The translations under genes and the position numbers were made by a program. Below, in pieces: positions 5,714 through 25,394 of a DNA stretch of 64,000 nucleotides. The notes beneath the pieces were generated by a model that saw only the letters and a program-made list of their open reading frames with translations, had not been told where the DNA came from and made no database searches. The first letter of the stretch is position 1. Every line of letters begins with the position of its first letter. Origin of the DNA: Octopus sinensis (lineage: Eukaryota); assembly GCF_006345805.1 (NCBI RefSeq), contig NC_043015.1, positions 46,438,001 to 46,502,000 on the forward strand, written 5' to 3'.

Positions 5714-6093
5714 AAGCACTCCGTCGGTTACGACGATGAGGGTTCCGGTTGATCCGAATCAACGGAACAGCCTGCTCGTGAAATTAACGTGTAAGTGGCT
5801 GAGCACTCCACAGACACGTGCACCCTTAACGTAGTTCTCGGGGATATTCAGCGTGACACAGAGAGTGACAAGGCCGGCCCCTTGAAATGCAGGTACAACA
5901 GAAACAGGAAGTAAGAGTGAGAGAAAGTTGTGGTGAAAGAGTACAGCAGGGATCACCACCATCCCCTGCCGGAGCCTCGTGGAGCTTTAGGTGTTTTCGC
6001 TCAATAAACACTCACAACGCCCGGTCTGGGAATCGAAACCGCGATCTTATGACCGCGAGTCCGCTGCCCTAACCACTGGGCCATTGCGCCTCC
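5714..6093 (-). mobile_element. tRNA-derived SINE family C
   Basis: Minus-strand head ggaggcgcaatggcccagtggttagggcagcggactcgcggtc...ggtttcgattccc (A and B boxes); related pieces at about 50940-51228 and 51660-51960. Confidence 0.8.
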
Positions 6094-6646
6094 ACATAAT
6101 AGACTAAAACTAGTATAAACAGAGCCCCAACATGCCCAGAGTCAGAGGATAGGAATTGAAATAATAGTCTAAAAGAATACAATGTTGTCTCCCTTTATCT
6201 CTATTACCCAATGATTTTTCTTAAAGAATTGTTTTCTGCGTTACCGTAAAAAAAAATATTCCATGGCAGACTTTCTTATAAGCTATCCTTACTTCATAGG
6301 GAACGAAACTAGCAAAGAATAAGATGATTCCCACCCCCCTCACTTGGAGTATTCCTCTGTTTCATACAACTAGAATTATCGTTCTGAAAGAATTTTTTTC
6401 CTTTATTTATTTGAAAATATTTCAATCTTTTTAAAACAATTTTTTCCAGCTATCTTCTGACACTTTCCCTTGCCAGTGGGTCAGTGATAGCTACTCCGAA
6501 ATGTGGCTGATTCTCCAAGAATCAATATTTCCTTAGTCATTGCACGGTGACCGCCATAAGCTTTAAGCTTATATAAATATACCATTATTATCATTTAGAG
6601 GATTGTAAAAACGGCACCATATAAAAAGCCATTCGCACCGAAGCAA

Positions 6647-6723
<77 letters not shown>

Positions 6724-6864
6724 TACTTGCATAAGATGTATTTGCATAGCGAGTGACTTGATCTGAGATCATGATCTGGAACGAAAACAATTGCAGCGTG
6801 GAAGGTGTTTATAAGCCATTTAAGAAACACACAAAACCGTTAGATTCACTTCATTTATATTTGA

Positions 6865-6915
6865 TTTGTCAAAATATTTTCGTCGCTTTGAGACCGCGAT
6901 CTGTTCACTGACAAA
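6865..6915 (-). ncRNA. Minimal type I hammerhead-like motif with G3:C8 core (GUGAACA)
   Basis: Minus strand: TTTGTCA GTGAACA GATCGC ggtctcaaa GCGAC GAAA ATAT T T TGACAAA, i.e. 7-bp stem I, stem II, GAAA and a palindromic loop III. Activity untested. Confidence 0.45.
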
Positions 6916-6930
6916 GCTTTGTGCTGCGTA

Positions 6931-6991
<61 letters not shown>

Positions 6992-7024
6992 ATGCATGTA
7001 ATGTATGTATGTATACATATATAC

Positions 7025-7358
7025 AGAAGATAAGAAAATAGATAATTGATAAATAATTATTTATTAATTAAAAACATTGACAACATCTCTGATAGCTGTT
7101 TCAATTCCAGACTTTTAGAAATTAACAAAACTGAAACCATTTAAAAGTCGAAGCTCATCAGAGTTAGCTAAATATATACAAATTAGGTGTTCAATTCCTG
7201 TATGTTGTGTATACAGCTACAAACTGTTAACTCTTGGTTTCAATTTGGTAAATCAATTTCTAAAAGCCTGGAATTGAAACAGCTGTCAGAGATGTTGTAA
7301 AATTTTTTAATTAATAAATAATAATTTATTAATTATCTCTCTATTTTTTTGTCTTCTT
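7025..7358. mobile_element. Inverted pair of Penelope-like (PLE) repeat ends carrying a hammerhead core
   Basis: Arms at about 7025-7125 and 7255-7358 are imperfect reverse complements. Minus strand 7084-7165 reads CTGATGA-stem II-GAAA-CAGCTA-TC; the plus arm has GAAA-CAGCTG-TC. PLE origin is inferred from the motif. Confidence 0.55.
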
Positions 7359-8373
7359 TAAATATATATAAGCCACGGTTTATCTAGTTACCTTGCAGTT
7401 GAATATTAATTATAATATTCAACACATTTTGAATAAGTACTAAACAGTATTTCCATTGGATTTTATTTTCCCTTAATGAGGTTTGTGACTTTTATTTGAA
7501 CTTTTATTTGAGCAGACGTTTTAAGCTTTGTTTGGTAGCGAGGACAAGGATCCTAAAAAGAACCTCGCTTGAACCTTTTTAAACTCAAGGAAAGAAGTTT
7601 TTAGCCAGTGTCCTCCTAGAAGCTTGGAACATACCAGGTGTTGAATAAAACAACTACATCATCTTCTTAGAACACCACCACAGACGGAACCAGAATGTTG
7701 AAGAAATCAACAATAGTAGCATTTTAGAACATCACCACAGCCGAAGCCGTTCCTGCAAGCTTCGAACTCCACAGATGTCGAATAAAGCAGCAACAACAGC
7801 ATCTTAGAACACCACCGCAGTCGGATCCGAGATGTTGGGTTTTTAAGATATAACACACGTAGCTTAGAATATAATCACAAGCGAAGGTGATGTAGGGGAG
7901 ATAACCCCGTACCTCCTATGGCAACCAAGCTCGAACATATTGTTTATATGTACTTAGTAACCTTGGCGTTTTCTACATTTAAAGAAAGACGTTATGTGTC
8001 ATCGGCCATTTTGAGTCTGTAGAGTTGCCTATACAGCTTAGCGCTTTATAGGTGCGAAACGAATGGCTACTCTTTGACCATCCATAATAAACTTAATATA
8101 TACTCTCTCTCCTCTCCCTTCTTTTTCTCTCTTCCTCTCTCCCTCTTCTGAAAGGAATCGGTTGTGTTCACAACTGGAGAAGAACGGGTTCCGTCTGGCC
8201 TTAAAATGCCTACGGCTCGCAGTATGTCGTAACGGCGTCCCTACGACTAGGCAAGGCAAAATATAAAGTACCAAGTGCTTCAGTCGAATAATAATTCTTA
8301 TAACGTATCCTAGATGATGCGAATCGAATCATAACTGAAGACAATACGATTAGAAAATGTTACACCCCTTTTT

Positions 8374-8789
8374 GGATCTTTTCCATTTGAACGGCAGTTT
8401 TTAACATAATTTCTAGGTAACTAAAAAATTTTTAACTTCGTATACTGGTAGAATGTGTTTATAAAACATCTTTTCCTCTTGGCTTATTGAGCAAATTCTA
8501 TAGTTTGTAAGATATTTGTTGTTGTTTTTTCTTCAATCTCTGCAATTTCAACCAATCACTGACGTCTATTGAGTTAAAAAGCATTCTGTGCCGTATGAAT
8601 ATGTCCCTCGTTTAAGAAACAAATTGGGTTTATTTACATTTGTGAAGAAAAAAAATACCCTTCCCCCACCCCTAACCCTAACCCTAAAACAGATTGAAAT
8701 GCAATAGATCGATTCTAGGGTCATAATTATGGGTGACAATTTCATATGACACCGCTAGAAAAAAACTGCCGTTCAAACCGAAAAGATCC
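8374..8789. mobile_element. MITE family M (TIR GGATCTTTTCGGTTTGAACGGCAG; internal TTAGGG repeats), copy 1
   Basis: Terminal inverted repeats at both ends; interior homologous to the other copies listed. Confidence 0.85.
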
Positions 8790-9456
8790 CCCTCCTTTTC
8801 CTCAACCAGCAACATTTATATAATTCAAATCCAGAAAGATAGCGAACCACTTTTAATACAAGATGTAATAATGTATTCCTTACATATTCGTTACATAAAC
8901 TTATTAATGGATTTCACTTAAATTTTAACGCTATTAATAATATTATGAAGTGAAATCATAGCCGACTTTCACATATTCATGCCACTGACAGGAAACAATT
9001 ACACAACCCAACGGCTATCGTGTTGTCAGGAAGTTTTTATCGGATTTGAAGTGGGGGGGGGTTGATTTGCAGAATCCAGAAATAGAATCTTTTGTTTACC
9101 ATCACGTCTAGAATTCAAGATAACCCCAGCACCAATCATTAGTAGGCAACCTCATCTCCGGTCTCAGGTCGGTGAGATATTTTATCTTCCACCTTAGAAG
9201 GAAGGTGAGGCTGGAGAGAAGATGCCTGTCAAAGAAAATGTTCAAAGAAAGATGGTTGCATGTTGCGAGGGTGCTGGGAATGAAAGATTCCTCGTGAACA
9301 TGTCATAAGTCTGAATACAAAAGTTTCGGTAGGAGAATGGGGCTCGTGGGGTCGGAGCGTAAGCCATCTCTCTGCTTCATCTCATGTTTGTATTTCGTCC
9401 TTGTATCTCATTCGATTTCATTATATTTTGTAAAATTTTAAAAGTCATACAATCTG

Positions 9457-9686
9457 TTTCTTTATTGCCCACAAGGGGCTAAACATAGAGGGGACAAACA
9501 AGGACAGACAAACGGATTAAGTCGATCACATCGACCCCAGTGCGTAACTGGTACTTAATTTATCGACCCCGAAAGGATAAAAGGCAAAGTAGACCTCGGC
9601 GGAATTTGAACTCAGAACGTGACGGCAGACGAAATACGGCTACGCATTTCGCCCGGCGTGCTAACGCTTCTGCCAGCTCGCCGCCT
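9457..9686 (-). mobile_element. SINE family B, CpG-intact copy
   Basis: Full unit ggcggcgagctggcagaagcgttagc...gtgggcaataaagaaa. Other copies at about 21676-21847(-), 24398-24628(-), 24815-25021(-), 41075-41312(+), 52198-52428(+), 57133-57358(-), 62241-62470(-). Confidence 0.85.
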
Positions 9687-9744
9687 TAAAAGTCAGGCTG
9701 TATTGTCCCCCTCTATGTTTGGGCCTTGTGGCTAATAAAGAAAT

Positions 9745-11260
9745 TGGATGATATGCGTGGACTTTAAGATGGGCAATTTTCTCCCGAGGCAACAAAGTGG
9801 ATACACCAAATATCCATGCTTTTTATGTATGTGGGGACAGCAGAGCCAAGGGAAAACATTGGGTGGTCAAAGAATGGTCGTAGCAAATATTGGTTCCAGG
9901 TCTTTTTATGTGGTTGAAGAACCTTTAGTTCAACCAGGAAAAAATCATCCTACCTTTTTGATTGGTTGAAATTGCCGAAATGCAAGAAATTAAAGACCAA
10001 ATATCTTACAAACTATAGAATTTTCTCAATAAAGCCAAGAGAAAAAGATGTTTTATAAACACATTCTACCAGTATACGAAGTTTTAAATGTTTTAGTTAC
10101 CTAGAAATTATGTTAAAAACTGCCGTTCAAACCGAAAAGATCCCCCATCTCTCATCAATTTTCTGATTTGAGGCCCATCAAATACTCTAACTTTTATGAT
10201 TTCACTGCTAAGACCTGGAAATGTCTTGATCCAGAACTTTAACAAACTGCTTCATAATGCCAAGTTTTGTATGAAGAAAAGGTAGGATGATTTTTTCCTG
10301 GTTGAACTAAAGGTTCTTCAACCACATAAAAAGACCTGGAACCAATGTTTGCTACGACCATTCTTGAGGTGAAAACATTCTGTGCCGTATGAATATATCC
10401 CTCGTTTAAGAAACAGATTGGGTTTATTTACATTTCTGAAGAAAAAAAGATACCCTTCCCCCCACCCCTAACCCTAAAATAGATTGAAATGCAATAGATC
10501 GATACTAGGGTCATAATTATGGGTGACAATTTCATATGACACCGCTAGAAAAAACTGCCGTTCAAACCGAAAAGATCCGAGATGAGAACTTTGTAAATTC
10601 AATGAATTGCATTGAAATATAGAATTCATTTGTTATAATTATAAATTACTTGCTACACAACAAGAACGCAGCCAGCTATCCCCAAAGGTTGGGATCAAAT
10701 ATGAGCATAATGCTGCACTATTTTCGAAGTGTCTACCGTGTTAAATTCCTTGGAAATCTCGGTGACACAAGTGTCAAGCAATAAGAACGTTTCCATCAGA
10801 ACATGAAATTATATGAACATATGAAGGCAGATACGACTTGCAAATGATGGCGGATCACTGCAGGAACGTGGCTCGTGATCTTCCTGAGGTCCAGCACTCA
10901 AGAAAATCATCCACACGCAAATTCGTATTGCATAAACAATAATGTAATTTGTCTGCAGAAATTTTAAGAGTTTTACTAGTTTTTCAGTAGAATTTTAAGA
11001 AAACATTCTGGGTTTGAAGAAAAACCAATTTCTGTGTATGTTCGTATGTTATGCCTTGTTCCTCACAAGCTGTTTTATTTAAGAAAAATAAATAAAGAAA
11101 GAAAAAACAATGAAATTCTACGGATCCAGCATTATAAAACCCTGACGTGGTGGTAATAAACGGATATCATTTTCGGATTTGTGTGTCAAAATAGTTTTAG
11201 TTTAAGCTCAAATATTTTGACAACAGAAAACTTTTTCCTTTTTTTTTCTTTTTGTTGGCC
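9745..11260 (+). mobile_element. Decayed DNA transposon, Chapaev/CMC-like transposase remnant (partly inverted, MITE-interrupted)
   Basis: Translatable pieces ICVDFKMGNFLPRQQSGYTKYPCFLCMW (9748-), KIILPFLHTKLGIMKQFVKVLD and FPGLSSEIIKVRVFDGPQIRKLMRD (on the minus strand of the inverted block 10144-10364), then ENFVNSMN and NLGDTSVKQ*ERFHQ. Transposase identity is fairly clear; the superfamily is assigned from memory of the motifs. Confidence 0.7.
9959..10578. mobile_element. MITE family M copy 2, split by an inversion (halves 9959-10143 and 10365-10578)
   Basis: Both halves end in the TIR aaccgaaaagatcc. Re-inverting 9959-10364 restores one element with an 8-bp TSD gagatggg/gagatgag. Confidence 0.8.
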
Positions 11261-11332
11261 TATGTTATTGATGAAATAAAAAACAATGAACTGCAACGGG
11301 TTGCAAGATTAATATTTATTCTTCTCAGTGAC

Positions 11333-11824
11333 TTAAAAAAAGTACATCTGATTCCTTTCGGTGTAAGTAGAATATGCGACGTATATGGCAATAAACAAAA
11401 ACAGCCATATAACTGCATAATCAAAACAGACCAAGAAGTTTTTGAAATGCAACTGCCGATTATTACTATATTTAATGGCGTAAACTTTGTTCATATTGTT
11501 GTCAGCGCGTTCTGAATTATCGGGAGTCTCTTTGTTATTCTGATTTTCATCTGATATAGCATTTACAACCATATGTTGCTGGTTCTTGTTTTGTTCATGT
11601 TGATGTTGCTTAATAAACTTAGGTGTCTGAGTAACGAAAGCGTTACTGCCAGCCGAATCTGGGAAACGATTTGCGCATGTATTTCTCGACGATTTATTTA
11701 CAACAGCCTCATGTTTATAATTCAACGAACTATCTACCTCCGAAAAAATTCTCTCCCCATCATTTTTATGTAGAGGAGCCAAAACTAGGAAACAAATGAA
11801 ATAGATAGTACTCATTGGAGACAT
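11333..11824 (-). CDS. Intronless 163-aa predicted type I membrane protein; highly diverged SARAF-derived paralog
   Basis: Signal peptide ending LHKNDG|ERIF, N/Q-rich ectodomain, one TM (FDYAVIWLFLFIAIYVAYSTY), short tail. Collinear anchors shared with 15961-16704: LHKxxGERI, SAGxxAFV (tcggctggcagtaacgctttcgt vs tcggctggctgttatgcttttgt), AIS, YxxNN/YxNN, FD-TM-YSxY. AATAAA 13 nt after the stop (11315-11320, minus). Confidence 0.7.
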   Translation of the reverse strand: MSPMSTIYFICFLVLAPLHKNDGERIFSEVDSSLNYKHEAVVNKSSRNTCANRFPDSAGSNAFVTQTPKFIKQHQHEQNKNQQHMVVNAISDENQNNKETPDNSERADNNMNKVYAIKYSNNRQLHFKNFLVCFDYAVIWLFLFIAIYVAYSTYTERNQMYFF

Positions 11825-12146
11825 TTCAAGTCCCCTAAACGTAAACTTCGAAAATTAGTGTATTGATTTAGCGTTGCTAACGTTATCAAGGGACATAACG
11901 TGAGAGGAACTGCTGACTATATAGTGATGTAATAAATCAGCGAAATGAGATCAAGTGAAGTGGCAGAAACGTCAGAGCGTCGGACAAATTGCAACGAGGT
12001 ATTTATTTGTTCCCACTCCTTACGTTCCAAGTTCGAATACATCCGAAGTTAACTTTCTCTTTCACTCTCCTAGGATGCTGTGATCAAATTTAAGGCATAA
12101 TTTGATAAATGACAAGAGAATGTTAACAAGTAAATTCTTTATCGAC

Positions 12147-12546
12147 TTTCGAAACGGCAGTTTTTTCTAGCGGTGTCATATGAAATTGTCACCCATAATT
12201 ATGACCCTAGTATCGATCTATTGCATTTCAATCTATTTTAGGGTTAGGGGTGGGGGGTAGGGTATCTTTTTTTTCTTCAGAAATTTAAATAAACCCAATC
12301 TGTTTCTTAAACGAGGGATATATTCATACGGCACAGAATGTTTTCACCTCAATAGACGGTCATTGATTGGTTGAAATTGCCGAAATGCAAGAAATTAAAG
12401 ACCTAATATCTTACAAACTATAGAATTTTCTCAATAAAGCCAAGAGAAAAAGATGTTTTATAAACACATTCTACCAGTATACGAAGTTTTAAATTTTTTA
12501 GCTACCTAGAAATTATGTTAAAAACTGCCGTTCAAACCGAAAAGAT
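12147..12546. mobile_element. MITE family M copy 3 (left TIR truncated)
   Basis: Homologous interior and right TIR; about 320 bp upstream of the 11824 ATG. Confidence 0.85.
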
Positions 12547-12671
12547 TCGAGGATTGTTTTGGTTGAGGCTAAGTCGATAAAGTGAAAAAGAAAGAGTCGT
12601 TGGAATAGTCAGGACCCTCGCGAGCCTATATATTGGTTTGAGTGAAGTGCAAAGTATTATCTACCTTTCAC

Positions 12672-12732
<61 letters not shown>

Positions 12733-13089
12733 CATATATTAGGGAGTATAACTCCAAACTTACAGGGAAAAATTCAATTTAGTATTAAATCAAATTTCAC
12801 AATATATATATATATATAGAATATCAATTAGAGAAAAAAAACAACTATTATGCAATTCAAGCAATATACTTATATATTGATTATTCATTTTTATACTTTT
12901 TGTGATCAAGTTATATGTTTTACAAAAATATATTTATTTTTTATTTATGATTTGGTTTATGTCTATCATTGTTTGAATTGCATAATAATGGGTTTTTTTC
13001 TCTAATTTATATCATATATATATATATATATATATATATGGAAAAAAGTCAAGGTAGAAAATGCTAAAATAATTTTATAAAAAACATTT

Positions 13090-13125
13090 CAGTACCGGTT
13101 TCAGTCATTGAGACTTTTTTAACTG
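13090..13125 (-). ncRNA. Degenerate minimal hammerhead-like motif, U3:A8-type core
   Basis: Minus strand: CAG TTAAAAA AGTC tcaat GACT GAAA CCGG TA CTG. The G5 position is A in this copy, so it is predicted inactive. Confidence 0.35.
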
Positions 13126-13327
13126 TAAGTATGGAAAACAATTAAATTTTGGAAAAATTTGCAATTATTTGAAGAATATTTGCATAGTATTTAAATACAG
13201 GGGGGTATTTCCCTAGTTTCTGCCTGTCTCTATCTCTCGTTTACTCTTGTGGGTTCGAGGACGTTGTGAATTCTTGGCAGAGAAGAAGAAGAAGAAGAAG
13301 AAGAAGAAGAATGCGGGAGTGCCATGA

Positions 13328-13371
<44 letters not shown>

Positions 13372-13750
13372 ATAGTAGTAGTAGTAGTAGTAGTAGCTAT
13401 CACTGCCTCATAGACAGAAAAGGACCCAGATTAAGAGAGGAAATGTTTAAAAATTGAAATTGCTTTGGAAAAATAATTCATTCAGAATCATAATTTTCAT
13501 TGTATGATATACAGAAAAACTAACAGAAATGAAGGGGGCAAAAACTATAATCCATTGCCATTTTTCTTTCCCATGAAGTGGTAAAAGCTATTCCAGAATT
13601 CCGCCCCAGTGCTTGACTGGCGCTTTGTTTATCGACCCATAATGCATCATAGGTAAAGTTGACCGTAGCACGATTTGAACTCGCGAGTGGCTAAATGAAT
13701 GCCGCAAAACATTCTAGTCGACGCTCTTACCGACTGTCGACTTCCTACGT

Positions 13751-13886
13751 CTAAGATTCCTAAAGACACGCGTGATATATCATGACGGCGCCCCTACGAC
13801 CCTGCTAAGAGTTGAGGACCCTCAACTCTTAGCAGGGTCGTAGGGGCGCCGTCATGATATATCACGCGTGTCTTTAGGAATCTTAG
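13751..13886. repeat. Perfect 67-bp inverted repeat with 2-nt spacer
   Basis: 13751-13817 is the exact reverse complement of 13820-13886. Confidence 0.95.
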
Positions 13887-15367
13887 CTTGCTTGGTGAGG
13901 AGGTTGTTTATTGGACACCCTGCGGGATGAAAAACAAAACCCGTCAAAGGGCGGAGGAACTCTTGAGAGTCAACGGCCGTCCAATAAATGTCTTAAGGCT
14001 GTATCATGCGCGGGGACATAGAAATAATCGGACTGAATACCTGATCGCGCGGTTAAACCATTGGAGTGAAGGACTCCTAACCTTTTGTTAGGGCATCTTT
14101 CTAGGAGAAGGTAACTCAGGTAACTGGGATAACTCCGACATAAAAGCTGCGGCTCAGTGGTTACCGATGATGTTGACTTGTTCTTCTTTTCGGATTATGG
14201 CTGCTGTTGCTTAGAATTGACTCAGTGCACAGCCTATCCTCACTTAAAAAAAATCTTCTTGCACAGGCATTGCACGATAACAACATTGATTAAGCTTCGC
14301 GCAATGGCCATACTTGATAACGAGGGGGCAGCCACCATGTATGTATGTATGTATGTATGTATCTATGTATGTATCATGGGTAACATGTATGTATGTATGT
14401 ATGTATGTATGTATGTATCATGGGTAACATGCGGCCCGCCTCGCGAAGAACCATATCTCATGCGGGTCGCTTCTCGAAAAAAGTTGCGCGCGCGTAATTA
14501 TACCCGTCGCTAGCAATCCAGGATAATTTGGAAACAGAAACTACCATTGTTTCCTTTTATCCTATTATATGTACAAAGTTCGAAAGATTCATCCCTTAAA
14601 TTTATCCACTTTCAACAAGATTTATATTCATAGTCGTTCATCCAAAGTTACAAACAATGACCTGCCCTTCTGCACGAAATAAACCAGCGTATCTATTAAT
14701 TAATCCATAATAGGCGAATGAGTGGCTGTGTGGTAAGTAGCTTGCTTACCAACCACATGGTTCCGGGTTCAGTCCCACTGCATAGCACCTTGGGCAAGTG
14801 TCTTCTAATATAGCCTCGGGTCGACCAAAGCCTTGTGAGTGAATTTGGTAGACGGAAACCGAAAGAAGCCCATCGTATATATGTGTGTGTGTCTGTTTGT
14901 CCCCCCGATGCTGGTGTGTTTACGTCCCCGTAACCTAGCGGTTCGGCAATAAGTACTAGGCTTACAAAGAATAAGTCCGGGGTCGATTTGCTCGACTAAA
15001 GGCGGTGCTCCAGCAAGGTCACAGTCAAATGACTGAAACAGGTAAAAGAGTAAAAGTATAATACAATAAAGGGCAATCCTTCGGTATTGGTACACGACAT
15101 TATTCACCCACACAACTTTCTAGGCTGAAAAGAGAGAGTGAATGACGTCGTCCCGTCCCCTCATACTGACCCTCTGTAGGCCAATATTGAAGGATCGCCC
15201 AATAAGGGCTTACCAATAGGGGTTTGTTCTGTCACATCATCGCTGAACTTTCGATTGAAATTAAAATGAACGAGGCGTCCATATCAAAATAATAAGCAAA
15301 CTAAAGTTATTTTTCAATGAATAAAGACTATATTACATCGGAATAAAAGAAAATAACTAAACTATTT

Positions 15368-15801
15368 GGATCTTTTCGGTTTGAACGGCAGTTTTTTCTA
15401 GCGATGTCATATGAAATTGTCACCCATAATTATGACCCTAGTATCGATCTATTGCATTTCAATCTGTTTTAGGGTTAGTTAGGTTTAGGGTTAGGGTTAG
15501 GGGTGGGGGGAAGGGTATCTTTTTTCTTCAGAAATGTAAATAAACCCAATCTGTTTATTAAACGAGGGGACATATTCATACGGCACAGAATGTTTTCACC
15601 TCAATAGACGTCATTGATTGGTTAAAATTGCAGAAATTGAAGAAAAAAAACAACAAATATCATACAAACTGTAGAATTTTCTCAATAAAGCCAAGAGAAA
15701 AAGATGTTTTATAAACACATTATACCAGTATACGAAGTTTGAAAGTGTTTAGTTACGTGGAAATTATTTTAAAAAACTGCCGTTCAAAAGGAAAAGATGC
15801 C
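15368..15801. mobile_element. MITE family M copy 4
   Basis: TIRs at both ends; the longest internal (TTAGGG)-like run (about 15471-15505); flanked by agaaaataactaaactattt / agaaaataacaaaactattt. Confidence 0.85.
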
Positions 15802-15960
15802 AGAAAATAACAAAACTATTTTGTTCGAAAATTCGATACGAGATAAACGAGAAAATAGAGCAAAAAATAAATAAATCTATTGGAAAAACAGTAAAGTTTC
15901 ATAGTTAAACGAAAGCATTTTTTATTTTCTCGCAGTTCGATTGTTTATCTATTGTTTTGG

Positions 15961-16704
15961 TTACGCATCAGGTCTGGGATTTCGATTCATGCCGTGTTTG
16001 GCGGGTCTGATCACACACGATAAAATTTGATGGGGGCGAATTCTAAAATTACGAAAATGTTGCAGAGGTGGTTGAACTTTATTCGTTGCTGAAGCTGTTG
16101 CGATGAGCGGTGGTTTTGGAGTATTTGTATGTTTATCTAAATTCGAACTATTCTTATTATTTTTGGACGTGGAAAAGATATTCGGATACCAACTGTAAAC
16201 CATTTTAGCTAATAACACAAACAAAACGATACATAAAAAATCGAATGCCGGATCTGATCGGGAATCTTCATATTCCCGATTATTATTCTCAACGCTGTTA
16301 TTTATAGTGTATTCCAGACCACAAGAGTTGGCCAATACATAAGGATCATCAGAATAATCGAAGCCTTCGCAGGATATAGCGAGGTGTCCGAAACGGTATT
16401 TTTTATCCATGTTTGTTTTACAATCCCATAGGACATTGTTGCCATCCAAGCCTTTGTTGTAGCAATGGACTTGTTTTGGCACAAAAGCATAACAGCCAGC
16501 CGACCCTCCAATACATTTCAATTGAGGAACTGGTGTCAATCTTCTGGCAGTAGTCATTTGGTTTTGATACAAAGAAATAACCGTCACATCCTTCAGTAAT
16601 ATTCTTTCTCCTTCAGTTTTATGTAGAGATGTTAGTGATACGAAAGCAAACGCGAAAAAATATATAAATTCTGATCTTCTGGATGTTGAGAAGGATGTCA
16701 TCAT
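15961..16704 (-). CDS. SARAF: Intronless SARAF/TMEM66-like protein (store-operated calcium entry-associated regulatory factor), 247 aa
   Basis: Signal peptide, then ERILLKDVTVISLY...TTARRLTPVPQLKCIGGSAGC...CYNKGLDG..VLWDCKT.MD..YRFG...ISCEGFDYSDDPYVLANSCGLEY, which matches the SARAF luminal domain with six cysteines. One TM follows; the tail lacks the usual SARAF C-terminal motifs. AATAAA at 15921-15926 (minus). May be a paralog rather than the ortholog. Confidence 0.9.
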   Translation of the reverse strand: MMTSFSTSRRSEFIYFFAFAFVSLTSLHKTEGERILLKDVTVISLYQNQMTTARRLTPVPQLKCIGGSAGCYAFVPKQVHCYNKGLDGNNVLWDCKTNMDKKYRFGHLAISCEGFDYSDDPYVLANSCGLEYTINNSVENNNREYEDSRSDPAFDFLCIVLFVLLAKMVYSWYPNIFSTSKNNKNSSNLDKHTNTPKPPLIATASATNKVQPPLQHFRNFRIRPHQILSCVIRPAKHGMNRNPRPDA

Positions 16705-16931
16705 TTTGACTACAATATTTTCTGAAAGTCGCGTCGAAGACCAGGAGCAGATAACTACGTTGCTTAACAGTAGTAAAACTTCTTACAACTCAAATAATTC
16801 AATAATTGACGAGAGAAAGGAACTTCTATATGGTCGCTTCATCTGCTAGAAATAGAAGCTAAATCTCCTCCAAAATACACCCCACGTTTTCATTCTGTTT
16901 TTAAAGAAATATAACATTGAATAATGAAATG

Positions 16932-17372
16932 GGATCTTTTCGCTTTGACCGGCAGATTTTTAAAATAATTTCTTTGTAACTAAACACTTTTTAAACTTCG
17001 TATACTGGTAGAATGTGTTTATAAAACATCTTTTTCATAAAAGTTTAATAACGATAATCTTTTATTCATACGAACGTAACTGATATGAAATATGTCATAA
17101 ATAACAGTGGCAAATTCATATAACACCGCAAATAATTGTTGTTGACACACTACGGCAGAAATTGAATTCACCTCAATAGACGTCATTGATTGGTTGAAAT
17201 TGCCGAAATGCAAGAAATTAAACAACAAATAGCTTACAAACTACGGAATTTTCTCAAGAAAGCCAAGAGAAAAAGATGTTTTATAAACACATTCTACCAG
17301 TATACGAAGTTTAAAAGTGTTTAGTTACAAAGAAATTATTTTTAAAATCTGCCGGTCAAAGTGAAAAGATCC
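16932..17372. mobile_element. MITE family M copy 5, fold-back variant with ~104-bp terminal arms
   Basis: 16932-17035 is a near-exact reverse complement of 17270-17372; 8-bp TSD atgaaatg/atgaaacg. Confidence 0.85.
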
Positions 17373-18675
17373 ATGAAACGCTTAGATGTATGGGGGAAAA
17401 AACGGGACAGTCACCGCTGGAATGTCTGTGATCATAGGTATAATCAATCAGAGCTGATCTGAGGCTAAGACTAAACACCAGTTGATGGCGCATGATTAAA
17501 TTTTTTAAAATTCGCCTTGTAATCACAAGAGCACGGGTTTGGGATCTTGAGCAAGTGTTTTCTACCCAACAACTTCAGGATAGTGGCTGAAATTGAATAG
17601 ATTGAAACGGCGGAAGGTCTGAATTATAGGTGAAAATGAGTTCACAATGATAGTATCATTCAATAAGTAGGTACAGTGATTTTCTTGATCGAATTACTGA
17701 AGTACTTATCGAAGAAAGCGACCGTTGATCTGTTTCTATTTTAGGCACAAGGATTGGTTCTTTGAACATTTAAATCTTGAGAGATCAATGTGTCAAATAA
17801 GACGGAGCTTTCTTTTTTTGTTTACCGATTTCTTATCTAAGAAAGAAAAGATATGCATGTGTTAATCATCTACTCAAGTGTAGTACTGGCAGAATCCGTA
17901 CAGCGCTTCGCATTCTAATCCCCTTGCTGGTGAATTTACCATGCATCCTTCTGGGGCCGTGATTTCCGGTATGACTCCGGAGGAATGCAAGTAACCCGTT
18001 GATATATATATAAAGAATACAAAATGGGACAAGAACGCAAAACATCCGAACAGTTAGGTGATACAAAAATGGGACAACAAAACATCCAGATAGACGATAC
18101 AAAGAAAACAAGAACGGGTCATTCGAAGTTTTCTTTCTTCAGTCAAGTACCAGATTATCTTCGCAATTTCGGCTGATTATACTTGAAATTGCTCCAATAT
18201 GGCCAGCCCCAAGGAAAATCTAAGCTAAGAGTATTAGATTCCTTGGAAGAAAGCAGCGAATGTATACAAAAACAAGGACGGGAAAAAAACGGACAATGTT
18301 ACACAAATACAATAAAAATAATAACAGAACACACTAATATCACCATGTCGCGCACATATGGTTGTGATGCATGTGCCTGGTGTACCCTTATCAGACGGGT
18401 AGTCATGATGGGTATACTGGGCTTCGTATATTTTACCCCAGTGTCACTTTGATGGTATGCACTGCTTTCTCACTCAATGATAATAATAAATTCGTTTATT
18501 GGCCACAAGAGTTTACAAAAAATTACATTAAAACACATACAACATAAAGGGCTTCGGCAAAAGAGACCGATAGAATAAGTACGAGGCTTACAAAGAGTAA
18601 GTCCTGGGATTGATTTGCTCGACTAAAGGCGGTGCTCCAACATGGCCGCAGTCAATTGACTGAAACAAGTAAAAG

Positions 18676-18713
<38 letters not shown>

Positions 18714-18863
18714 ACGTTGTAAAACCCATTGTACCGACTTATTCTATCGGTCTGTTTTGCCGAACCGCTAAGTTACGGGGACATAAACACACCAGCATCG
18801 GTTGGCAAGCGATGTTGGGGGAACAAACACAGACATAAACATACACACACACACACACACACC

Positions 18864-18915
<52 letters not shown>

Positions 18916-19542
18916 CGATAGGCTTCTTTCAGTTTCCATCTACCAAATCCACTCACAAGGCTTTGGTCGGCCCAGGCTATAGTAGAAGACACTTGCCCAA
19001 GGTGCCACGCAGTGGGATTGAACCAGGAACCATGTAAGCTACTTACTCCTGCGCCTATAATAATAATAATAATAATAATAATAACTAATCGTTTCTAATG
19101 TGTAGGTTCAAGGCCAGGTATTTAGCGGGGGGTGGGGTTAGTCGTTTAAATCCATTCCAGTTCTTCACTGGAACTTTATTGTGTCAACCCCAGTGGGGGC
19201 GAAAACTAAGTCGGATCCTTTTGGATTCGAACTCACAAAGTAAAAGATCGCAACTAAATACCACGAAGTTTATTCTCTGACACTTTAACATTTCCCTCAC
19301 CCACCACACCAGAGTAAGTAATAACAATAATCAATGTAAACAAACCAAAGTGAAAACAAATAAAACGAAAATATAAAAAAACAACAATAATAATAAACAG
19401 CATCCGGGTCTTTGGTCGCTATGACGACACTTCGCTTTGTTTCTCGGATTCCCTCCCTCTCTCTCTCTCTCTCTCTCTCTTTTCAACTCTATCATTTATT
19501 TAATCCCTCTTCGTTGTTCTATTTCTCTCCCACCACTACTCT

Positions 19543-19596
<54 letters not shown>

Positions 19597-19743
19597 CTCT
19601 GTCTGTCTATATCTCTTTTTCTTATTGTATCTCTTTCTATCTTCTTTTCTAGTCTTGTTACCTTCAATCACATTGTCAGCCTCATTCATTCACACTTGGC
19701 AACCTTTCCTCTCTCTCTTTTTGTTTTCAGTTCACTCTATCAT

Positions 19744-19783
<40 letters not shown>

Positions 19784-22429
19784 TTTCCTCGCTATCTTTC
19801 TACTAAAGACAAAGGACGAGAAAGTAAAGAAGAGAATAAGTGGCACAATGAAAGTAAGAGAGAGAAAGTAAGCTTATAAAAACGTAACTAAGAAAGAAAG
19901 AAATCGAAAAGAGAAAGGGAAGAGGGGAAAAATAGTTATAAAAATAGAGACAGGTGAATAGTAAGAGAGAGAGAGAAAGAGAGGGGTCGATAGTGTGGGA
20001 GAGGAGAGAAAGAAAGAACAGAATAAGAGAGAAAGGAGAGAAAGAGTATACGTCTAGTGAAAAGTGAGAGAGAAGAGCGAGAGAAGGAGAGAATAGAAAG
20101 AATAAGAGAGAAAAAGAGAGTGTGTGTGCGTGTCTGCATTCGAATTTGATCTGACGATAAATCGAGTACGTGGATATTTTCTCCTGACATTCCACAGAAG
20201 ACCAACAAAGTGGTGTTGCTTGGACCAAAGTACATCGTGTCAACTGAAACAAAAACGGATGACGATGAAAAAAAAAGCATTCGTAAGTGAATCTGGTCTC
20301 TCAAAGAAATTATTAGTTGAAGGAGCATTTACCAACCAAGCACTACAGAATCGCTTCAAGGTAAAGAGAAAAAAAGTTCGTTTGTGGTTTAATCCCAGGT
20401 CAGTCCTGACCGAACTGGTCCTATGTATTATCAAAGGCGTCCCAGCTGTGACCATTACGTTTTTTTCTTTTTTTCTCACCCATCTCATCTCTTTCAAGCA
20501 CAGTATATCTTCCGTAAGACGCAGTTTTTCCCCAAAATAATTTCTCCAAAAAATCACCCTGGGTCTCCTATAAGTTGTTTCAAATATTTAGGACACTAAA
20601 ACTTTTCTCCCTGGATATGCACTGCTGAAATTCGGGTGCCTCCTTGCACGCTCGTATATCTTCTATACCATCAAATACAATAGTTATTAGCAGTGGTCCT
20701 CAGGCTGGGAAATAACAACCACCCCATCACAGAGATACACGATACCCTTTTCAAAAATATTAGATATCTGTCTCCATTAATTTTGGACGGAAGGAACATT
20801 GCCAATGGCAAATTACATTGACCTTAACTTGTACTTTACCTTAAGTACTTGTTGACCTCGGCGGAATTTGAACCCAGAACGTAAAGAACTGAATTCTGTC
20901 AATCTCCTATCAATGAGAAAACGGAATATCATTTTCGTTTTGTCGCCATAATGTTGGATAAATTCAAAAGCTTTAAAAGCATCTTAATTCTTTTTATCAA
21001 CGCAATTTTCCGCTCCTTATTCAATGCTCAGAGGATAAACTCCTGGTGAGTGGAGAGCATGGCCATGGCCCGCTCCTATGAGAAACTCTGGTCTGACCCC
21101 CAGGTTCCAGATTCGATCCAGGAGACTTATATTTGATCAACGGTGTCCCAGCCGTAACCATTTATTTCTTGCTTTCCTTTTTTCTTTTAGAGACCAAATA
21201 TATATCGGGCTACACATCCAGTATAACATTTTATTTATATATCTATCTATCTATCTGAGATGGTAGGCTTGTTGTCTAGTGACAGATTACCTCCTGTTCG
21301 AGCACGCCTTATGAATCGAGGACACCCCAGTCATGACCGTCCCGTTATTTTAGGGATGTGCAGAACTACGCTATCTATCCTTATTTAAGACAATATAGTG
21401 GGACTACAGGTAGATTTACCTGTTATTTCTAGCAGGATCAGTGACCACTTAAAGGCTTTGTGATAAACTTAGACGCTCAAGGTTTGACATATTTTAGAAT
21501 CTCAATTGTTTTCGTTGTAATATTTTCAACGATATTTTTGTTTTATTTTATTTTATTTTATTTTATTCCCCCCATATTAAGTTGAGTATCGATTGTAGTT
21601 TAACCCTTGTATAAACCCTATGATCAAGGACATTCCAGCTATGACCGTCCTGCTATTTTTTTCTGGACATAATATATATTTCTTTATTGCCCACAAGGGG
21701 CTAAACATAGAGAGGACAAACAAGGACAGACAAAGGGATTAAGTCGATTACATCGACCCCAGTGCGAAACTGGTACTTTTATTTATCGACCCCCGAAAGG
21801 ATGAAAGGCAAAGTCGACCTCGGCGGAATTTGAACTCAGAACGTAACGTGGACATAATATAATATGCCCAACTACATTGTCAAACAAGATGTATCTTTCC
21901 TTCTTTTAAAAACCGTAGAATGTAATATGAAGGTAGTATCATTGGCTGTTGTTTCTAGCGGGGTTAACTTGTTATAGGGGCACCCTCGTTGGCTTGAATA
22001 GTTGTTGACGGTTCTGACGATCAAGACAACGACCATGACCAACACGTCGACGACGATGATGATAACGATTATTGGTAAAGGTGTTTATAATAGCGATGGT
22101 GTCGACGATGTTGATGGGGAAACTTAAGTTGCTAATGGTGATAGTGATGATGATGATAATGATGATGGTGACGGAAGTTGTGTTTATAATGATGTAAGCT
22201 GTGATGATAAGTGTTGATGTTTGTTTTTGTTGTTCTTTTTTTATTTTGAATATAACTTTATACGCATATTGCGTCTGTGTGTATGTGTAAGATTAATCAC
22301 TTATGTATGTGTACGCATATACACAAATATTGCCGGCGAATATATGGCTATTGTGATTTCATTATTGTTTGCGCCACTATCTAATCAATCTATGTGTGTT
22401 TCTTTCTCTCTCTTCCTCTCTGTCTCTCT

Positions 22430-22434
22430 AGATG

Positions 22435-22514
<80 letters not shown>

Positions 22515-22573
22515 GACAGACATATAGATAGGTAGACAGATAGATAGATAGACAGACAGACAGATTGACAGGC

Positions 22574-22649
<76 letters not shown>

Positions 22650-22815
22650 GGACATATATAGATAGATAGACAGACAAACAGACAGACAGATAGATAGATA
22701 AACAGATAGATAAATAGATAGACAGATAGATAAATAGATATATAGACAGATAAATAGATAGATAGATAGACAGATAGATAAATAGACAGACAGACAGACA
22801 GACAGACAGATAGAC

Positions 22816-22853
<38 letters not shown>

Positions 22854-22875
22854 ACAGACAGACAGATAGATAGAT
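22430..22875. repeat. (TA)n followed by a long (TAGA/CAGA)n microsatellite
   Basis: Read directly; explains the YLSI-repeat ORFs. Confidence 0.95.
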
Positions 22876-23330
22876 TTGGGACGTTTTGTTGAAGTTTCTA
22901 TGACTCCATCTATACCTGTTTTCAAGAGTTAGTAACGAAATATCAGAGCTGAGCCACGACTTTGACAAAATGGTAACTAAGATAATAACAACAAACTCTT
23001 AAACGTAAACACACACACATATACATAGATTCGTAGACAAAGATAAAACAAATGGCTGTTCACAATAGCATGAAAGGCAAGCTTTATCACACATACACAA
23101 AAAAAAGCCACTTATAGGTCCCTCCTGTGTTTAAAGTTATATATGTGTATGTGTGCGTATGTATATATGTATGTTATGTATGTATATATGTTTATGTATG
23201 TATATGTATATGAGTATACGAATATATATGAGTACAAGGAAATGTATGTCTGTGTGTATATTTGTGAGTGTGTGTGTATAAATATGTATATGTATTATGT
23301 ATATATATCATTCATAAACATTTATATACC

Positions 23331-23920
23331 GTAGTTCTAGCCCCAGGAGGACACCTCCTCCAGCTTGCTATAGACACACTTTCTGTGCCCTATCAGTATT
23401 TGCAAAGGGAAGCCAGAAATACTGATAGGGCACAGAAAGTGTGTCTATAGCCAGCTGGAGGAGGTGTCCTCCTGGGGCTACAAACTACAGTAGCATCCAC
23501 CCTTAGGGGTTTAGCCATATTTAAATGGCAAATATACGTCGCGATGTGTTGTAGCTACTGTTTATAACTCTCTCTGAGATTTATTATTGCTCATTTATAT
23601 ACCAATATACATCAAAGTTTTCGATTTTCACTGAACACTGGTAAATACCGGAGAACTAGGATGCAAACATCCCTTAAAGGGTTAGGGTTAGGGTTGGCAT
23701 GATTATATATGCGTGTGTGTGTGTGTGTGTGTACATGTCTATGTATGTATATATAAATATATATATATATATACATCATGACGTATATTTGCCATTTGAA
23801 TATGGCTAAACCCCTAAAGGTGGATGCTACTGTGGTTTGTAGCCCCAGGAGGACACCTCCCCCAGCTGGCTTTAGACACACTTTCTGTACTCTACCAGTG
23901 TTTGCAAAGGGAAGCCATCC
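23331..23920. repeat. Three copies of one repeat segment in +/-/+ arrangement (nested inverted repeats)
   Basis: 23331-23401 pairs with 23417-23488 (15-nt loop); about 23417-23545 pairs with 23776-23905. The spacer contains gggttagggttagggtt. Confidence 0.85.
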
Positions 23921-25230
23921 TTCCCGTCGCTCTAAGATTTATTATATATATAATAAGAGATATACACATATATATCTAGATGCGTATATATTCATATACA
24001 AATGTGTGTGCCTGTGTGTGTTTTACTAATATTCAGTAGAAGTAACAGAGTGACTCAAGATCTGAGAGTTTCGCTTTATTCATTTCTTTTAATCATGAGT
24101 TACAAACGCATTTCAAGGACTGAGAATTTCACTTGTGAAACATATTATCCTTCATCATCCTCATTTTCAACATCCTCTTTTCTATGCTACAGACGGGGTC
24201 TGATTAGGCAGATTTTTATGCAGCCGGACGCCCTTCATGTTCCTAACCCATTCTTGTTTCCAAGCAAAGTATTATTTCCTCATGACCGAACATGATTTTG
24301 CGGTATACCGAAAATGAATGCAGCAAGAGGGAAATTAACTCATGTCTCGCTACATGAAAGACTTTGCTTGGAGACACACACGTATACATCTATTTATTAT
24401 TTCTTTACTACCCACAAGGGGCTAAACATAGAGAGGACAAACAAGGACAGACAAACGGATTAAGTCGATTACTTCGACATCAGTGCGTAACTGGTACTAA
24501 ATTTATCGACCCCGAAAGGATGAAAGGCAAAGTCGACCTCGGCGGAATTTGAACTCAGAACGTAGCGGCAGACGAAATAGTGCTAAGCATTTCGCCCAGC
24601 GTGCTAACATTTCTGCCAGCTCGCCGTTATAACCATCTCGCGCATATATAACAGGCTTCCGTCTACCAAATTCATTTACAAGACTTTGGTTGGTCCAGGG
24701 CTATTGTAGAAGACACTTACTTGTCCAAGATGCCAGGCAGTGGGACTGAACTCGGAACTATGTGCAGATATGAGTTAAACACTCATATCTGCATCTATGT
24801 ATATGCCTATATATCTATTTCTTTACTACCCACAAGAGGCTAAACAAAGAGAGGACAAACAAGGACAGACAAACGGATTAAGTCGATACTTATTTAATCG
24901 ACCCCGAAAGGATGAAAGGCAAAGTCCACCTCGACGGAATTTGAACTCACAACGTAACGGCAGACGAAATACGGCTACTCATTTCGCCCGGCGTGCTAAC
25001 GTTTCTGCCACCTCGCCGCCCTATATATATGCCTATATATCCTTATATGTATGTGCCTGTGCGTGCGTTTCAACTGAAACGTAAATATGTATATATAAAT
25101 CGATATGTATATATCGTCACCGAAAGATATGCACATAAAAAAACCCAGAGAAGTAGAGAAAACAGCAGAGTAAATTAGATAATGATAGTTATGGCCATAA
25201 CTATCTTTATCGCATACATATATATATATA

Positions 25231-25379: not shown

Positions 25380-25394
25380 AGGTAATCCCATAAA

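What the first reader, a model, noticed from the sequence alone, without database searches (positions are those of the whole stretch)
11333..11824. Orphan membrane protein born from SARAF: signal peptide and TM kept, disulfide fold erased
Seen: an intact 163-codon ORF 4.1 kb downstream of, and co-oriented with, the SARAF-like gene. Five collinear anchors are shared, one of them nearly identical at DNA level (tcggctggcagtaacgctttcgt vs tcggctggctgttatgcttttgt). The aligned cysteines are substituted (AGC to AGS, ISC to ISD) and only one Cys remains in the soluble ectodomain. The ectodomain has become N/Q/H-rich, the net indels between anchors are in frame, the tail is cut to about 9 aa, and an AATAAA follows the stop. 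Inference: staying open and topologically intact despite such divergence in AT-rich DNA suggests selection. This would be a lineage-specific, rapidly evolving type I membrane protein, possibly a new modulator of ER calcium signalling or a tissue-restricted (e.g. gamete or gland) surface protein. Similarity searches could easily miss the link.
Basis: partly seen in the sequence, partly recalled or inferred. Interest (0 to 1): 0.85.

Follow-up and report, generated by a model that had tools for sequence, protein, structure and literature searches.

The report
Degenerate tandem copy of octopus SARAF-like gene
Next to an octopus-specific copy of the calcium-regulator gene SARAF lies an unannotated, still-open 163-codon reading frame that is a very old, almost unrecognisable duplicate of it, keeping only the membrane-targeting ends; it may be a lineage-specific small membrane protein, but there is no evidence yet that it is expressed or conserved.

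Summary
Window 11333-11824 (-) is an intact 163-codon ORF, 4.1 kb downstream of a genuine single-exon SARAF-family gene (15961-16704, Pfam 1.7e-52) and in the same orientation. The window is Octopus sinensis chr CM016877.1.

Homology to the neighbour is real, but it can only be demonstrated for codons 1-66: the signal peptide, LHKxxGERI and SAGxxAFV (0 of 1258 null windows reach the score). For the remaining codons it is marginal (p about 0.02).

The ORF fails every sequence and structure criterion for SARAF:
- no Pfam hit;
- five invariant cysteines gone;
- no beta-sandwich predicted;
- a cytosolic tail of about 10 aa.

It has no relative among 1.84 billion representative proteins and is not annotated.

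For coding: the frame is open against odds of about 6e-6 for its composition, the other five frames carry 4-19 stops, the three-base periodicity is strong, and all five anchors are in frame. Synonymous sites are saturated, so the duplication is old.

Against: codon usage does not pick out the frame, chance ORFs here often look like membrane proteins, and no orthologue or expression data could be reached.

Verdict: probably a selected, degenerate SARAF-derived type I membrane ORF (about 0.55). A dead relic is the main rival (about 0.3). The proposed calcium-signalling role is speculation.

The parts
11333..11824 (-). ORF A: intact 163-codon ORF (ATG 11822-11824, TAA 11333-11335). It is unannotated and is a degenerate duplicate of the SARAF-like neighbour.
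   Evidence: It is the second-longest ATG ORF in the 64 kb window, and the other five frames carry 4-19 stops. It is not on record as a called gene.
11756..11824 (-). Codons 1-23: signal-peptide-like N-terminus. MSPMST is followed by the h-region IYFICFLVLAPL, then HKNDG. The likely cleavage site is near G23/E24, by analogy with the neighbour; this is inferred.
   Evidence: The Kyte-Doolittle 11-residue maximum is 2.61, against 2.29 in the neighbour. BLASTP matches 12/23 residues with the neighbour's signal peptide and junction, E = 5e-4.
11745..11775 (-). Anchor 1, CDS nt 50-80 (PLHKNDGERIF). It is 26/31 nt identical to nt 77-107 of the neighbour (SLHKTEGERIL).
   Evidence: E = 2.4e-5; score 37 against a null maximum of 31 (0 of 494). 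Differences fall mostly at third codon positions.
11634..11656 (-). Anchor 2, CDS nt 169-191 (SAGSNAFV). It is 19/23 nt identical to the neighbour's SAGCYAFV at 16481-16503. The conserved Cys is replaced by Ser.
   Evidence: E = 0.013. Diagonal 33, in frame.
11438..11746 (-). Codons 27-129: Asn/Ser/Lys/Gln-rich segment predicted to be disordered. It has one Cys (C50) and one N-glycosylation sequon (N43-K-S). It also holds the weak anchors AIS (CDS nt 265-272) and NNR (CDS nt 360-369).
   Evidence: AlphaFold pLDDT is below 50 for residues 34-36, 39-44 and 46-101, with no strands. Composition and Cys positions are, the sequon. The weak anchors have E of 6.5 and 0.54.
11366..11437 (-). Codons 130-153: the single transmembrane helix (FLVCFDYAVIWLFLFIAIYVAYSTY). 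It is collinear with the neighbour's TM (FDFLCIVLFVLLAKMVYSWY).
   Evidence: Kyte-Doolittle 19-residue peak of 2.37. AlphaFold helix with pLDDT 87-92. Similarity to the neighbour's TM has p about 0.017 by shuffling.
11336..11365 (-). Codons 154-163: a 10-aa tail (TERNQMYFF and the preceding residue), where the neighbour has a tail of about 75 aa.
11315..11320 (-). AATAAA hexamer 13 nt after the stop. It is a possible polyA signal but weak evidence in AT-rich DNA.
11917..11923 (-). TATA-like TATATAG, 93-99 nt upstream of the ATG. Weak and unverified.
   Evidence: upstream sequence.
15961..16704 (-). Parent-lineage gene B: a single-exon, 247-aa, octopod-specific SARAF paralogue. Its luminal domain is intact and its tail is not the canonical one.
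   Evidence: Pfam SARAF 1.7e-52. PDB 6o2u SARAF luminal domain 2.6e-38. Orthologues at 90% identity (O. bimaculoides) and 83% (species X). dN/dS against X is 0.079/0.287.
12136..12546 (.). MITE-like interspersed repeat 312 bp upstream of the ORF's ATG. It belongs to a young subfamily.
9958..10562 (.). Rearranged young copy of the same repeat downstream of the ORF: 9958-10141 direct and 10364-10562 inverted, 98-99% identical to 12136-12546. Together with the upstream copy it bounds the 1.59 kb of unique DNA that holds the ORF.

Best explanation
ORF A is an old tandem duplicate of the octopod-specific SARAF paralogue that lies 4.1 kb upstream. It has diverged almost beyond recognition but has been kept as a coding sequence.

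What it keeps:
- the homologous start;
- a signal-peptide-like N-terminus with the LHKxxGERI junction;
- the SAGxxAFV motif;
- one C-terminal transmembrane helix.

What it has lost:
- the SARAF luminal beta-sandwich, including the five invariant cysteines;
- the cytosolic tail.

If translated, the product would be a small type I single-pass membrane protein of the secretory pathway. It would carry a disordered, Asn-rich luminal or extracellular segment of about 100 aa and a cytosolic stub of about 10 aa.

Shown: the ORF, its partial homology to the neighbour, the loss of SARAF features, and the improbability of the open frame.

Inferred: that selection kept the frame, the membrane topology, and any activity. 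If it is active, it most likely works through its TM and juxtamembrane helix in the membrane. It is unlikely to work as a SARAF-type regulator, because it has neither the luminal domain nor the tail.
For: Homology:
- The local DNA score of 37 exceeds all 494 null windows.
- The N-terminal block has z = 7.3, with 0 of 1258 null windows reaching it.
- BLASTP E = 5e-4. The global protein alignment has z = 7.3.
- hhalign against a SARAF profile aligns residues 4-66 with P = 0.0067.
- The shared residues are specific to the neighbour's lineage.
- The C-terminal chain has p about 0.02 and the TM segment p about 0.017.
- All five anchors lie on diagonals that are multiples of 3.

Coding maintenance:
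- There is no stop in 163 codons, while the other five frames of the same DNA have 4-19 stops.
- 0 of 20,000 composition-preserving shuffles stay open. P is about 6e-6 for the whole ORF and about 7e-4 for codons 66-163 alone.
- Three-base periodicity gives chi2 = 31 (p = 2e-5). That is the second highest of 28 long ORFs, and the pattern resembles the SARAF genes.
- Synonymous sites in the alignable codons are saturated: pS is 0.72, against 0.34 for the same codons between the neighbour and its species-X orthologue. The copy is therefore old, and a neutral relic of that age should be full of stops and frameshifts.

Architecture:
- Signal-like h-region, a single TM, and a disordered middle.
Against: - No transcript, protein or orthologue evidence could be reached.
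- The ORF is not a called gene in the O. sinensis record.
- It has no relatives in the word-indexed search of 5.8 billion clustered sequences or in the exhaustive search of 1.84 billion representatives.
- A six-frame query of the surrounding unique DNA found no called ORF from an orthologous locus. Yet species-X contigs cover both SARAF paralogues, and the caller used there reports ORFs as short as 32 aa.
- Codon-usage log-likelihood does not prefer the ORF's frame (0.062 against 0.086 for frame +2).
- The Asn/Lys/Gln-rich composition is what AT-rich DNA encodes by default.
- Signal-like plus TM-like segments occur in 4 of 42 chance ORFs here.
- Homology beyond codon 66 is only marginal.
- The dN/dS estimate in the anchors is biased, because the anchors were chosen for their similarity.
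Confidence: 0.55

Rival explanations
1. Dead relic. The ORF is a non-functional remnant of the duplicate. It is either not transcribed, or was released from selection recently. Its open frame is a leftover or a matter of luck, and the hydrophobic ends reflect AT-rich composition.
For: - It is not annotated.
- No orthologue or any called ORF from an orthologous locus was found.
- Codon usage does not discriminate the frame.
- All fold-determining residues are lost.
- The predicted middle is low-complexity and disordered.
- Chance ORFs of 120-152 aa exist in the window, and 4 of 42 chance ORFs look like signal peptide plus TM.
Against: - With divergence at saturation (pS 0.72; no detectable similarity outside the anchors), about 12 stops would be expected in 163 codons. 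None is present, and P is about 6e-6.
- The five other frames of the same DNA are full of stops.
- Indels between all anchors are in frame.
- Periodicity is strong.
- The start and the TM are at homologous positions.
Confidence: 0.3
2. Partial duplication or chimera. Only the first 200 nt or so (signal peptide to SAGxxAFV) were copied from the SARAF-like gene. The remaining ~100 codons, including the TM-like stretch, are unrelated sequence into which the frame happens to read, or into which it was extended de novo.
For: - Neither DNA nor protein similarity beyond codon 66 is significant in the global and local tests (ectodomain z = -0.8; z of -0.8 to 0.8).
- Identity along diagonal 60 is only 35%.
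- There is no flank homology outside repeats.
- TM-like segments are common in chance ORFs.
Against: - The collinear in-frame chain of 8-10-nt matches has p about 0.02.
- The TM matches the neighbour's TM with p about 0.017, including FD at its start and YS.Y at its end.
- The spacing of signal peptide, motifs and TM mirrors the parent.
- 98 further open codons have P about 7e-4 by chance.
Confidence: 0.12
3. Chance resemblance. The ORF is unrelated to SARAF and the anchors are coincidental matches in AT-rich DNA.
For: Three of the five anchors are individually not significant (E of 0.5-6.5). The Pfam, phmmer and PDB searches see nothing.
Against: Anchors 1 and 2 together beat every one of 494 and 1258 null windows. 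The ORF is adjacent to the only SARAF gene in the window, has the same orientation, and matches it collinearly and in frame.
Confidence: 0.03

Closest known systems
SARAF / TMEM66 (Pfam PF06682; luminal domain structures PDB 6o2u, 6o2v, 6o2w)
   Same: Descent: the ORF is a tandem neighbour of a bona fide SARAF paralogue and is homologous to it over the signal peptide, LHKxxGERI and SAGxxAFV. Both have a type I layout, with an N-terminal signal-like segment and one TM at a collinear position.
   Different: The ORF has no Pfam or profile match at family level. The five invariant luminal cysteines and the beta-sandwich are gone. The middle is predicted to be disordered. The cytosolic region is reduced to about 10 aa and has none of the conserved C-terminal motifs. 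It therefore should not be filed as a SARAF, nor expected to regulate store-operated calcium entry in the same way.
Octopod-specific SARAF paralogue 'B' (window 15961-16704; O. bimaculoides P0002, species-X P0003)
   Same: This is the closest relative and the likely parent lineage. Both are single-exon, have the same orientation, and share lineage-specific residues. B has itself already lost the canonical SARAF C-terminal motifs.
   Different: B keeps the complete luminal domain, with six Cys and a PDB match at E = 2.6e-38. It is conserved at 83-90% identity among three octopods with dN/dS about 0.28. No known orthologues of the ORF exist, and it has no fold.
Orphan (taxonomically restricted) genes that arise by duplication and divergence beyond recognition, detectable only through synteny with the parent
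   Same: There are no detectable homologues in exhaustive searches. The parent gene is adjacent. Short residual anchors remain. The product is short, disordered and membrane-anchored.
   Different: Membership of that class requires evidence of expression and of a conserved ORF in sister species. Neither could be obtained here.
Unprocessed (duplicated) pseudogene
   Same: It is a tandem copy that has lost the parent's functional residues and is not annotated.
   Different: It has no stop codon or frameshift despite saturated divergence.

Membership tests
SARAF family (PF06682) | Scores above the Pfam gathering threshold, or matches a SARAF profile significantly | tested here: not met
   No SARAF hit even at E <= 1. 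hhalign against a 12-sequence SARAF profile gives probability 5.7% and P = 0.0067, over residues 4-66 only. phmmer against the PDB finds nothing at E <= 10.
SARAF family (PF06682) | Luminal beta-sandwich domain with the invariant cysteines (C64, C81, C95, C112 and C128 in the neighbour's numbering) | tested here: not met
   The ORF has a single ectodomain Cys (C50), and SAGC has become SAGS. AlphaFold predicts no strands, and residues 46-101 have pLDDT below 50 (single-sequence model).
SARAF family (PF06682) | Type I topology: N-terminal signal peptide plus a single TM helix | tested here: met
   Hydropathy gives a signal-like h-region of 2.61 and one TM peak of 2.37 at residues 129-153, with nothing hydrophobic in between. 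The AlphaFold TM helix has pLDDT 87-92. Caveats: no dedicated signal-peptide predictor was available, and 4 of 42 chance ORFs pass the same crude test.
SARAF family (PF06682) | Cytosolic C-terminal regulatory region with conserved motifs (PGFW..GG.LGY and the terminal GFGGTxRR) | tested here: not met
   The tail is about 10 aa. The motifs are visible in the consensus and are absent from the ORF. They are also absent from the neighbour B.
SARAF family (PF06682) | Common descent from a SARAF gene | tested here: met
   Significant for codons 1-66. Marginal for the rest.
SARAF family (PF06682) | Regulates STIM/Orai store-operated calcium entry | not testable with these tools
   This needs cell-based assays.
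Duplicated pseudogene | Disabling mutations (stops or frameshifts) relative to the parent | tested here: not met
   The ORF runs intact from ATG to TAA, and all anchors are in frame.
Duplicated pseudogene | No transcription or translation | not testable with these tools
   No RNA-seq or proteomic data were reachable. The only indirect hint is the absence from the annotation.
Orphan gene by divergence | No homologue detectable by sequence search, while a syntenic parent exists | tested here: met
   Searches found nothing. The parent lies 4.1 kb away.
Orphan gene by divergence | ORF conserved and under selection in sister species; expressed | tested here: inconclusive
   No orthologous locus could be retrieved. 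The species-X contigs show no A-like ORF, but it is not known whether they cover the locus.

The most novel reading that the evidence does not exclude
ORF A is expressed and under selection as a 'headless, tailless' SARAF. It would be a small ER or secretory-membrane protein that uses its retained TM and juxtamembrane helix to bind the SARAF-like paralogue, canonical SARAF or STIM, and so modulates store-operated calcium entry in particular octopus tissues. It would also be a clean, synteny-anchored example of an orphan gene made by divergence beyond recognition, with the parent still next door.
Probability: 0.1. Interest if true: 0.65.

Novelty: new variant of a known kind. Interest (0 to 1): 0.35.

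Why it matters
If the ORF is expressed and conserved, it would document a stepwise decay or repurposing series within one genome. The series runs from canonical SARAF (300 aa), to the octopod paralogue B (luminal domain kept, tail replaced), to ORF A (only the targeting signal and membrane anchor kept).

It would also be a concrete case in which an apparent orphan gene can be traced to its parent through synteny and two short anchors. That bears on the debate over how many lineage-specific genes arise by divergence and how many arise de novo.

It would add an unannotated gene to the O. sinensis and O. vulgaris gene sets. If it is a dead relic, the finding is ordinary.

Tried and rejected
1. 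Direct homologue searches with the ORF: word-indexed search, exhaustive phmmer over 1.84 billion representatives, PDB and Pfam. All were empty. The only Pfam hit was DUF2417 at 16 bits, below its cut-off of 25, and I disregarded it.

2. Retrieval of orthologous loci. The O. bimaculoides protein P0002 is not on record. The ORF itself is not on record. The species-X contigs are only about 1.4 kb and do not reach the ORF's position.

3. A six-frame concatenation of the unique DNA 10579-12135, used as a query to catch any ORF called on an orthologous contig. It found nothing at E <= 10.

4. Global DNA alignment with free end gaps as a test of whole-length homology. The statistic collapses to about 0 and is uninformative except for the N-terminal block. 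I replaced it with an 8-mer band-chain test. My first chain script timed out.

5. A codon-usage likelihood test trained on the two octopus SARAF genes. It did not discriminate frames for the ORF; the training set was only about 545 codons.

6. Flank homology, to tell segmental duplication from retroposition. The loci share only interspersed MITE-like repeats, which fits an old event but decides nothing.

7. The idea that the 98-99% identical repeats bracketing the ORF mark a recent duplication of its locus. I rejected it because identity stops exactly at the element's ends.

8. Tandem-repeat origin of the Asn/Gln-rich middle. TRF finds no array inside the ORF.

9. Literature. 'SARAF' plus 'octopus' returns only author-name hits, and the run accession is not in the library.

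10. Rfam finds no RNA family anywhere in the window.

Full report
**Where the window comes from**

The SARAF-like protein encoded in the window is found on one public record: Octopus sinensis assembly GCA_006345805.1, chromosome CM016877.1. A 20.7-kb locus fetched from that record matches window 26704..5961 at 100% identity. A window coordinate y therefore corresponds to CM016877.1 position 46,438,000 + y.

**Check of the observation**

- Window 11333-11824 on the minus strand is an intact ATG-to-TAA ORF of 163 codons.
- A 247-codon single-exon ORF lies at 15961-16704 on the same strand. Its stop is 4,136 bp upstream of the first ORF's ATG.
- This 247-codon ORF, called B here, is a true SARAF-family protein. 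Pfam PF06682 gives E = 1.7e-52. The solved SARAF luminal domain 6o2u matches at E = 2.6e-38.
- Both quoted 23-mers are present and 19/23 identical.

**Is the similarity more than chance?**

For the N-terminal third, yes:
- The best local DNA alignment (CDS nt 50-80 of the ORF against nt 77-107 of B, 26/31) scores 37. The maximum over 494 equally long stretches of the same window, on both strands, is 31.
- A block alignment of ORF nt 1-195 against B nt 1-230 has z = 7.3, with 0 of 1258 null windows reaching it.
- BLASTP gives 12/23 identities over the end of the signal peptide and LHKxxGERI, E = 5e-4.
- hhalign against a 12-sequence SARAF profile aligns residues 4-66 with P = 0.0067 but only 5.7% probability.

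For the C-terminal two-thirds the evidence is marginal:
- The ectodomain alone is not similar at protein level (z = -0.8).
- The three remaining anchors are 8-10-nt exact matches with E of 0.5-6.5.
- Taken together as a collinear band they are matched or beaten by 11 of 576 null windows (p about 0.02).
- The TM segment resembles B's TM with p about 0.017 by shuffling.

All five anchors lie on diagonals 27, 33, 60, 60 and 54, each a multiple of three.

The residues shared in the anchors (LHK, GERI, AFV) are those of the B lineage. The canonical octopus SARAF has LEE, GRKV and RFV. The ORF therefore derives from the B lineage after B split from canonical SARAF.

**The paralogue family**

- O. 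sinensis has a second SARAF, P0004 (300 aa, 45% identical to B). It is also single-exon and lies 5 Mb away on the same chromosome.
- P0004 keeps the canonical C-terminal motifs. B has replaced them.
- B is conserved in O. bimaculoides (90% identity) and in an unidentified octopod, 'species X' (83% identity, Logan runs SRR118693xx).
- B against its species-X orthologue gives dN/dS of 0.079/0.287.
- Species X also has the canonical gene.

**What the ORF no longer is**

- It has no SARAF Pfam match and no PDB match.
- It has no relative at all in the word-indexed search of 5.8 billion clustered sequences or in the exhaustive phmmer search of 1.84 billion representatives.
- The five cysteines that are invariant in SARAF are gone.
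- A single-sequence AlphaFold model (mean pLDDT 60) has an N-terminal helix, a low-confidence stretch that is coil from residue 43 (pLDDT below 50 over most of residues 34-101), and a confident C-terminal helix containing the TM (pLDDT 87-92). It predicts no beta strand.
- The cytosolic tail is about 10 aa.

The ORF therefore fails every defining feature of the family except topology and descent.

**Is it a gene?**

For:
- The frame is open for 163 codons, whereas the other five frames of the same DNA contain 4-19 stops.
- None of 20,000 composition-preserving shuffles stays open. The analytic probability is about 6e-6 for the whole ORF and about 7e-4 for codons 66-163 alone.
- It is the second-longest ATG ORF in the window, after B.
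- Three-base periodicity is strong (chi2 = 31, p = 2e-5, second of 28 long ORFs). Its pattern is purine-rich at position 1, G-poor at position 2 and T-rich at position 3, like the SARAF genes.
- In the 29 alignable codons, synonymous sites are saturated between the ORF and B (pS 0.72). The same codons differ at pS 0.34 between B and its species-X orthologue. The duplication is therefore much older than that species split. A neutral copy of that age should have about 12 stops and out-of-frame indels.

Against:
- The ORF is not a called gene in the annotated record.
- A codon-usage likelihood trained on the two octopus SARAF genes does not prefer its frame.
- Its composition is what AT-rich DNA encodes by default.
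- Signal-like plus TM-like segments occur in 4 of 42 chance ORFs of 80 aa or more in this window.
- The anchor-based dN/dS is biased by how the anchors were chosen.

No orthologous locus could be reached. P0002 is not on record, and the species-X contigs are only about 1.4 kb. A six-frame query of the unique DNA around the ORF found no called protein in any frame.

The caller used on those contigs reports ORFs as short as 32 aa. The absence of an A-like ORF from species X is therefore mild negative evidence. However, neither B nor the canonical SARAF of O. sinensis or O. vulgaris appears in any Logan assembly either. The collection therefore says nothing about expression in this species.

**Context**

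- Outside the CDS, the two loci share only copies of a ~411-440-bp MITE-like element.
- The copies in both flanks of B are missing from species X.
- The copies bracketing the ORF (12136-12546 upstream; 9958-10141 and 10364-10562 downstream) are 98-99% identical to one another. Other copies are 87-90% identical.
- That identity ends exactly at the element's borders. They are therefore recent independent insertions, not a duplication of the ORF's locus.
- TRF finds no tandem array inside the ORF, and Rfam finds nothing in the window.

**Verdict**

- Most likely (about 0.55): an old, degenerate tandem duplicate of the octopod SARAF paralogue that has been maintained as a coding sequence. Its product would be a small type I membrane protein with a disordered luminal segment and no SARAF fold or tail.
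- Main rival (about 0.3): a dead relic.
- Less likely: a partial-duplication chimera (about 0.12) and pure chance (about 0.03).

Its inference of selection is reasonable but unproven. The proposed calcium-signalling or gamete-surface roles are speculation, and a SARAF-like mechanism is unlikely given what has been lost.

None of the steps I took or propose needed to be referred.

Noticed in passing
window 8376-8773, 9958-10141, 10364-10562, 12136-12546, 15384-15798, 16934-17370, 25994-26399, 57805-58190: A ~411-440-bp non-autonomous element with terminal inverted repeats (MITE-like) hits the window at least nine times. Most copies are 87-90% identical to one another. The copies in both flanks of the SARAF-like gene are absent from the orthologous contig of another octopod (L001), so they are lineage-specific insertions.
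   Followed up: partly
window 10442-10562 vs 12153-12273; 9870-9958 vs 10277-10365: Two inverted-repeat pairs are each 99% complementary. The first pair (121 nt) encloses the 1.59 kb of unique DNA that holds the ORF and could in principle mediate its inversion. The second pair (89 nt) lies inside a rearranged young copy of the MITE-like element. An assembly artefact is not excluded.
   Followed up: partly
window 15961-16704 (-); L007 10001-10903: The SARAF-like neighbour lacks the conserved SARAF C-terminal motifs (PGFW..GG.LGY and the terminal GFGGTxRR) that the second O. sinensis SARAF (P0004) keeps. It is nevertheless conserved in three octopods with dN/dS about 0.28. Both octopus SARAF genes are intronless and lie 5 Mb apart on one chromosome.
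   Followed up: partly
window ~20259 onward (+), e.g. 41657-41998: A PACRG (Parkin co-regulated, Pfam ParcG) gene lies on the plus strand, head-to-head with the SARAF-like gene. An exon-sized ORF at 41657-41998 matches ParcG at E = 2e-23.
   Followed up: no
window 25606-26022 (-): A 139-aa ORF has a DDE_1 endonuclease match (E = 4.6e-6). It is a transposase relic, probably within a PACRG intron.
   Followed up: no
window 28162-28566 (-): A 134-aa ORF shows extreme three-base periodicity (chi2 = 214) and the highest codon-usage score among the control ORFs, with no Pfam match. It could be a trinucleotide-repeat region or an unannotated exon.
   Followed up: no
window 9457-9685, 24400-24626, 41080-41312, 57132-57358, 62242-62470: A second interspersed repeat family of about 228 bp, with copies 89-94% identical.
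   Followed up: no
window 6569-6830, 13266-13457, 18729-19037, 19412-20328: Microsatellite and low-complexity tracts (CT/TC, CA/TG, and AGC-type runs that encode poly-Ser or poly-Arg). They generate long spurious ORFs of up to 152 aa, and these set the real-sequence background for ORF length in this window.
   Followed up: no
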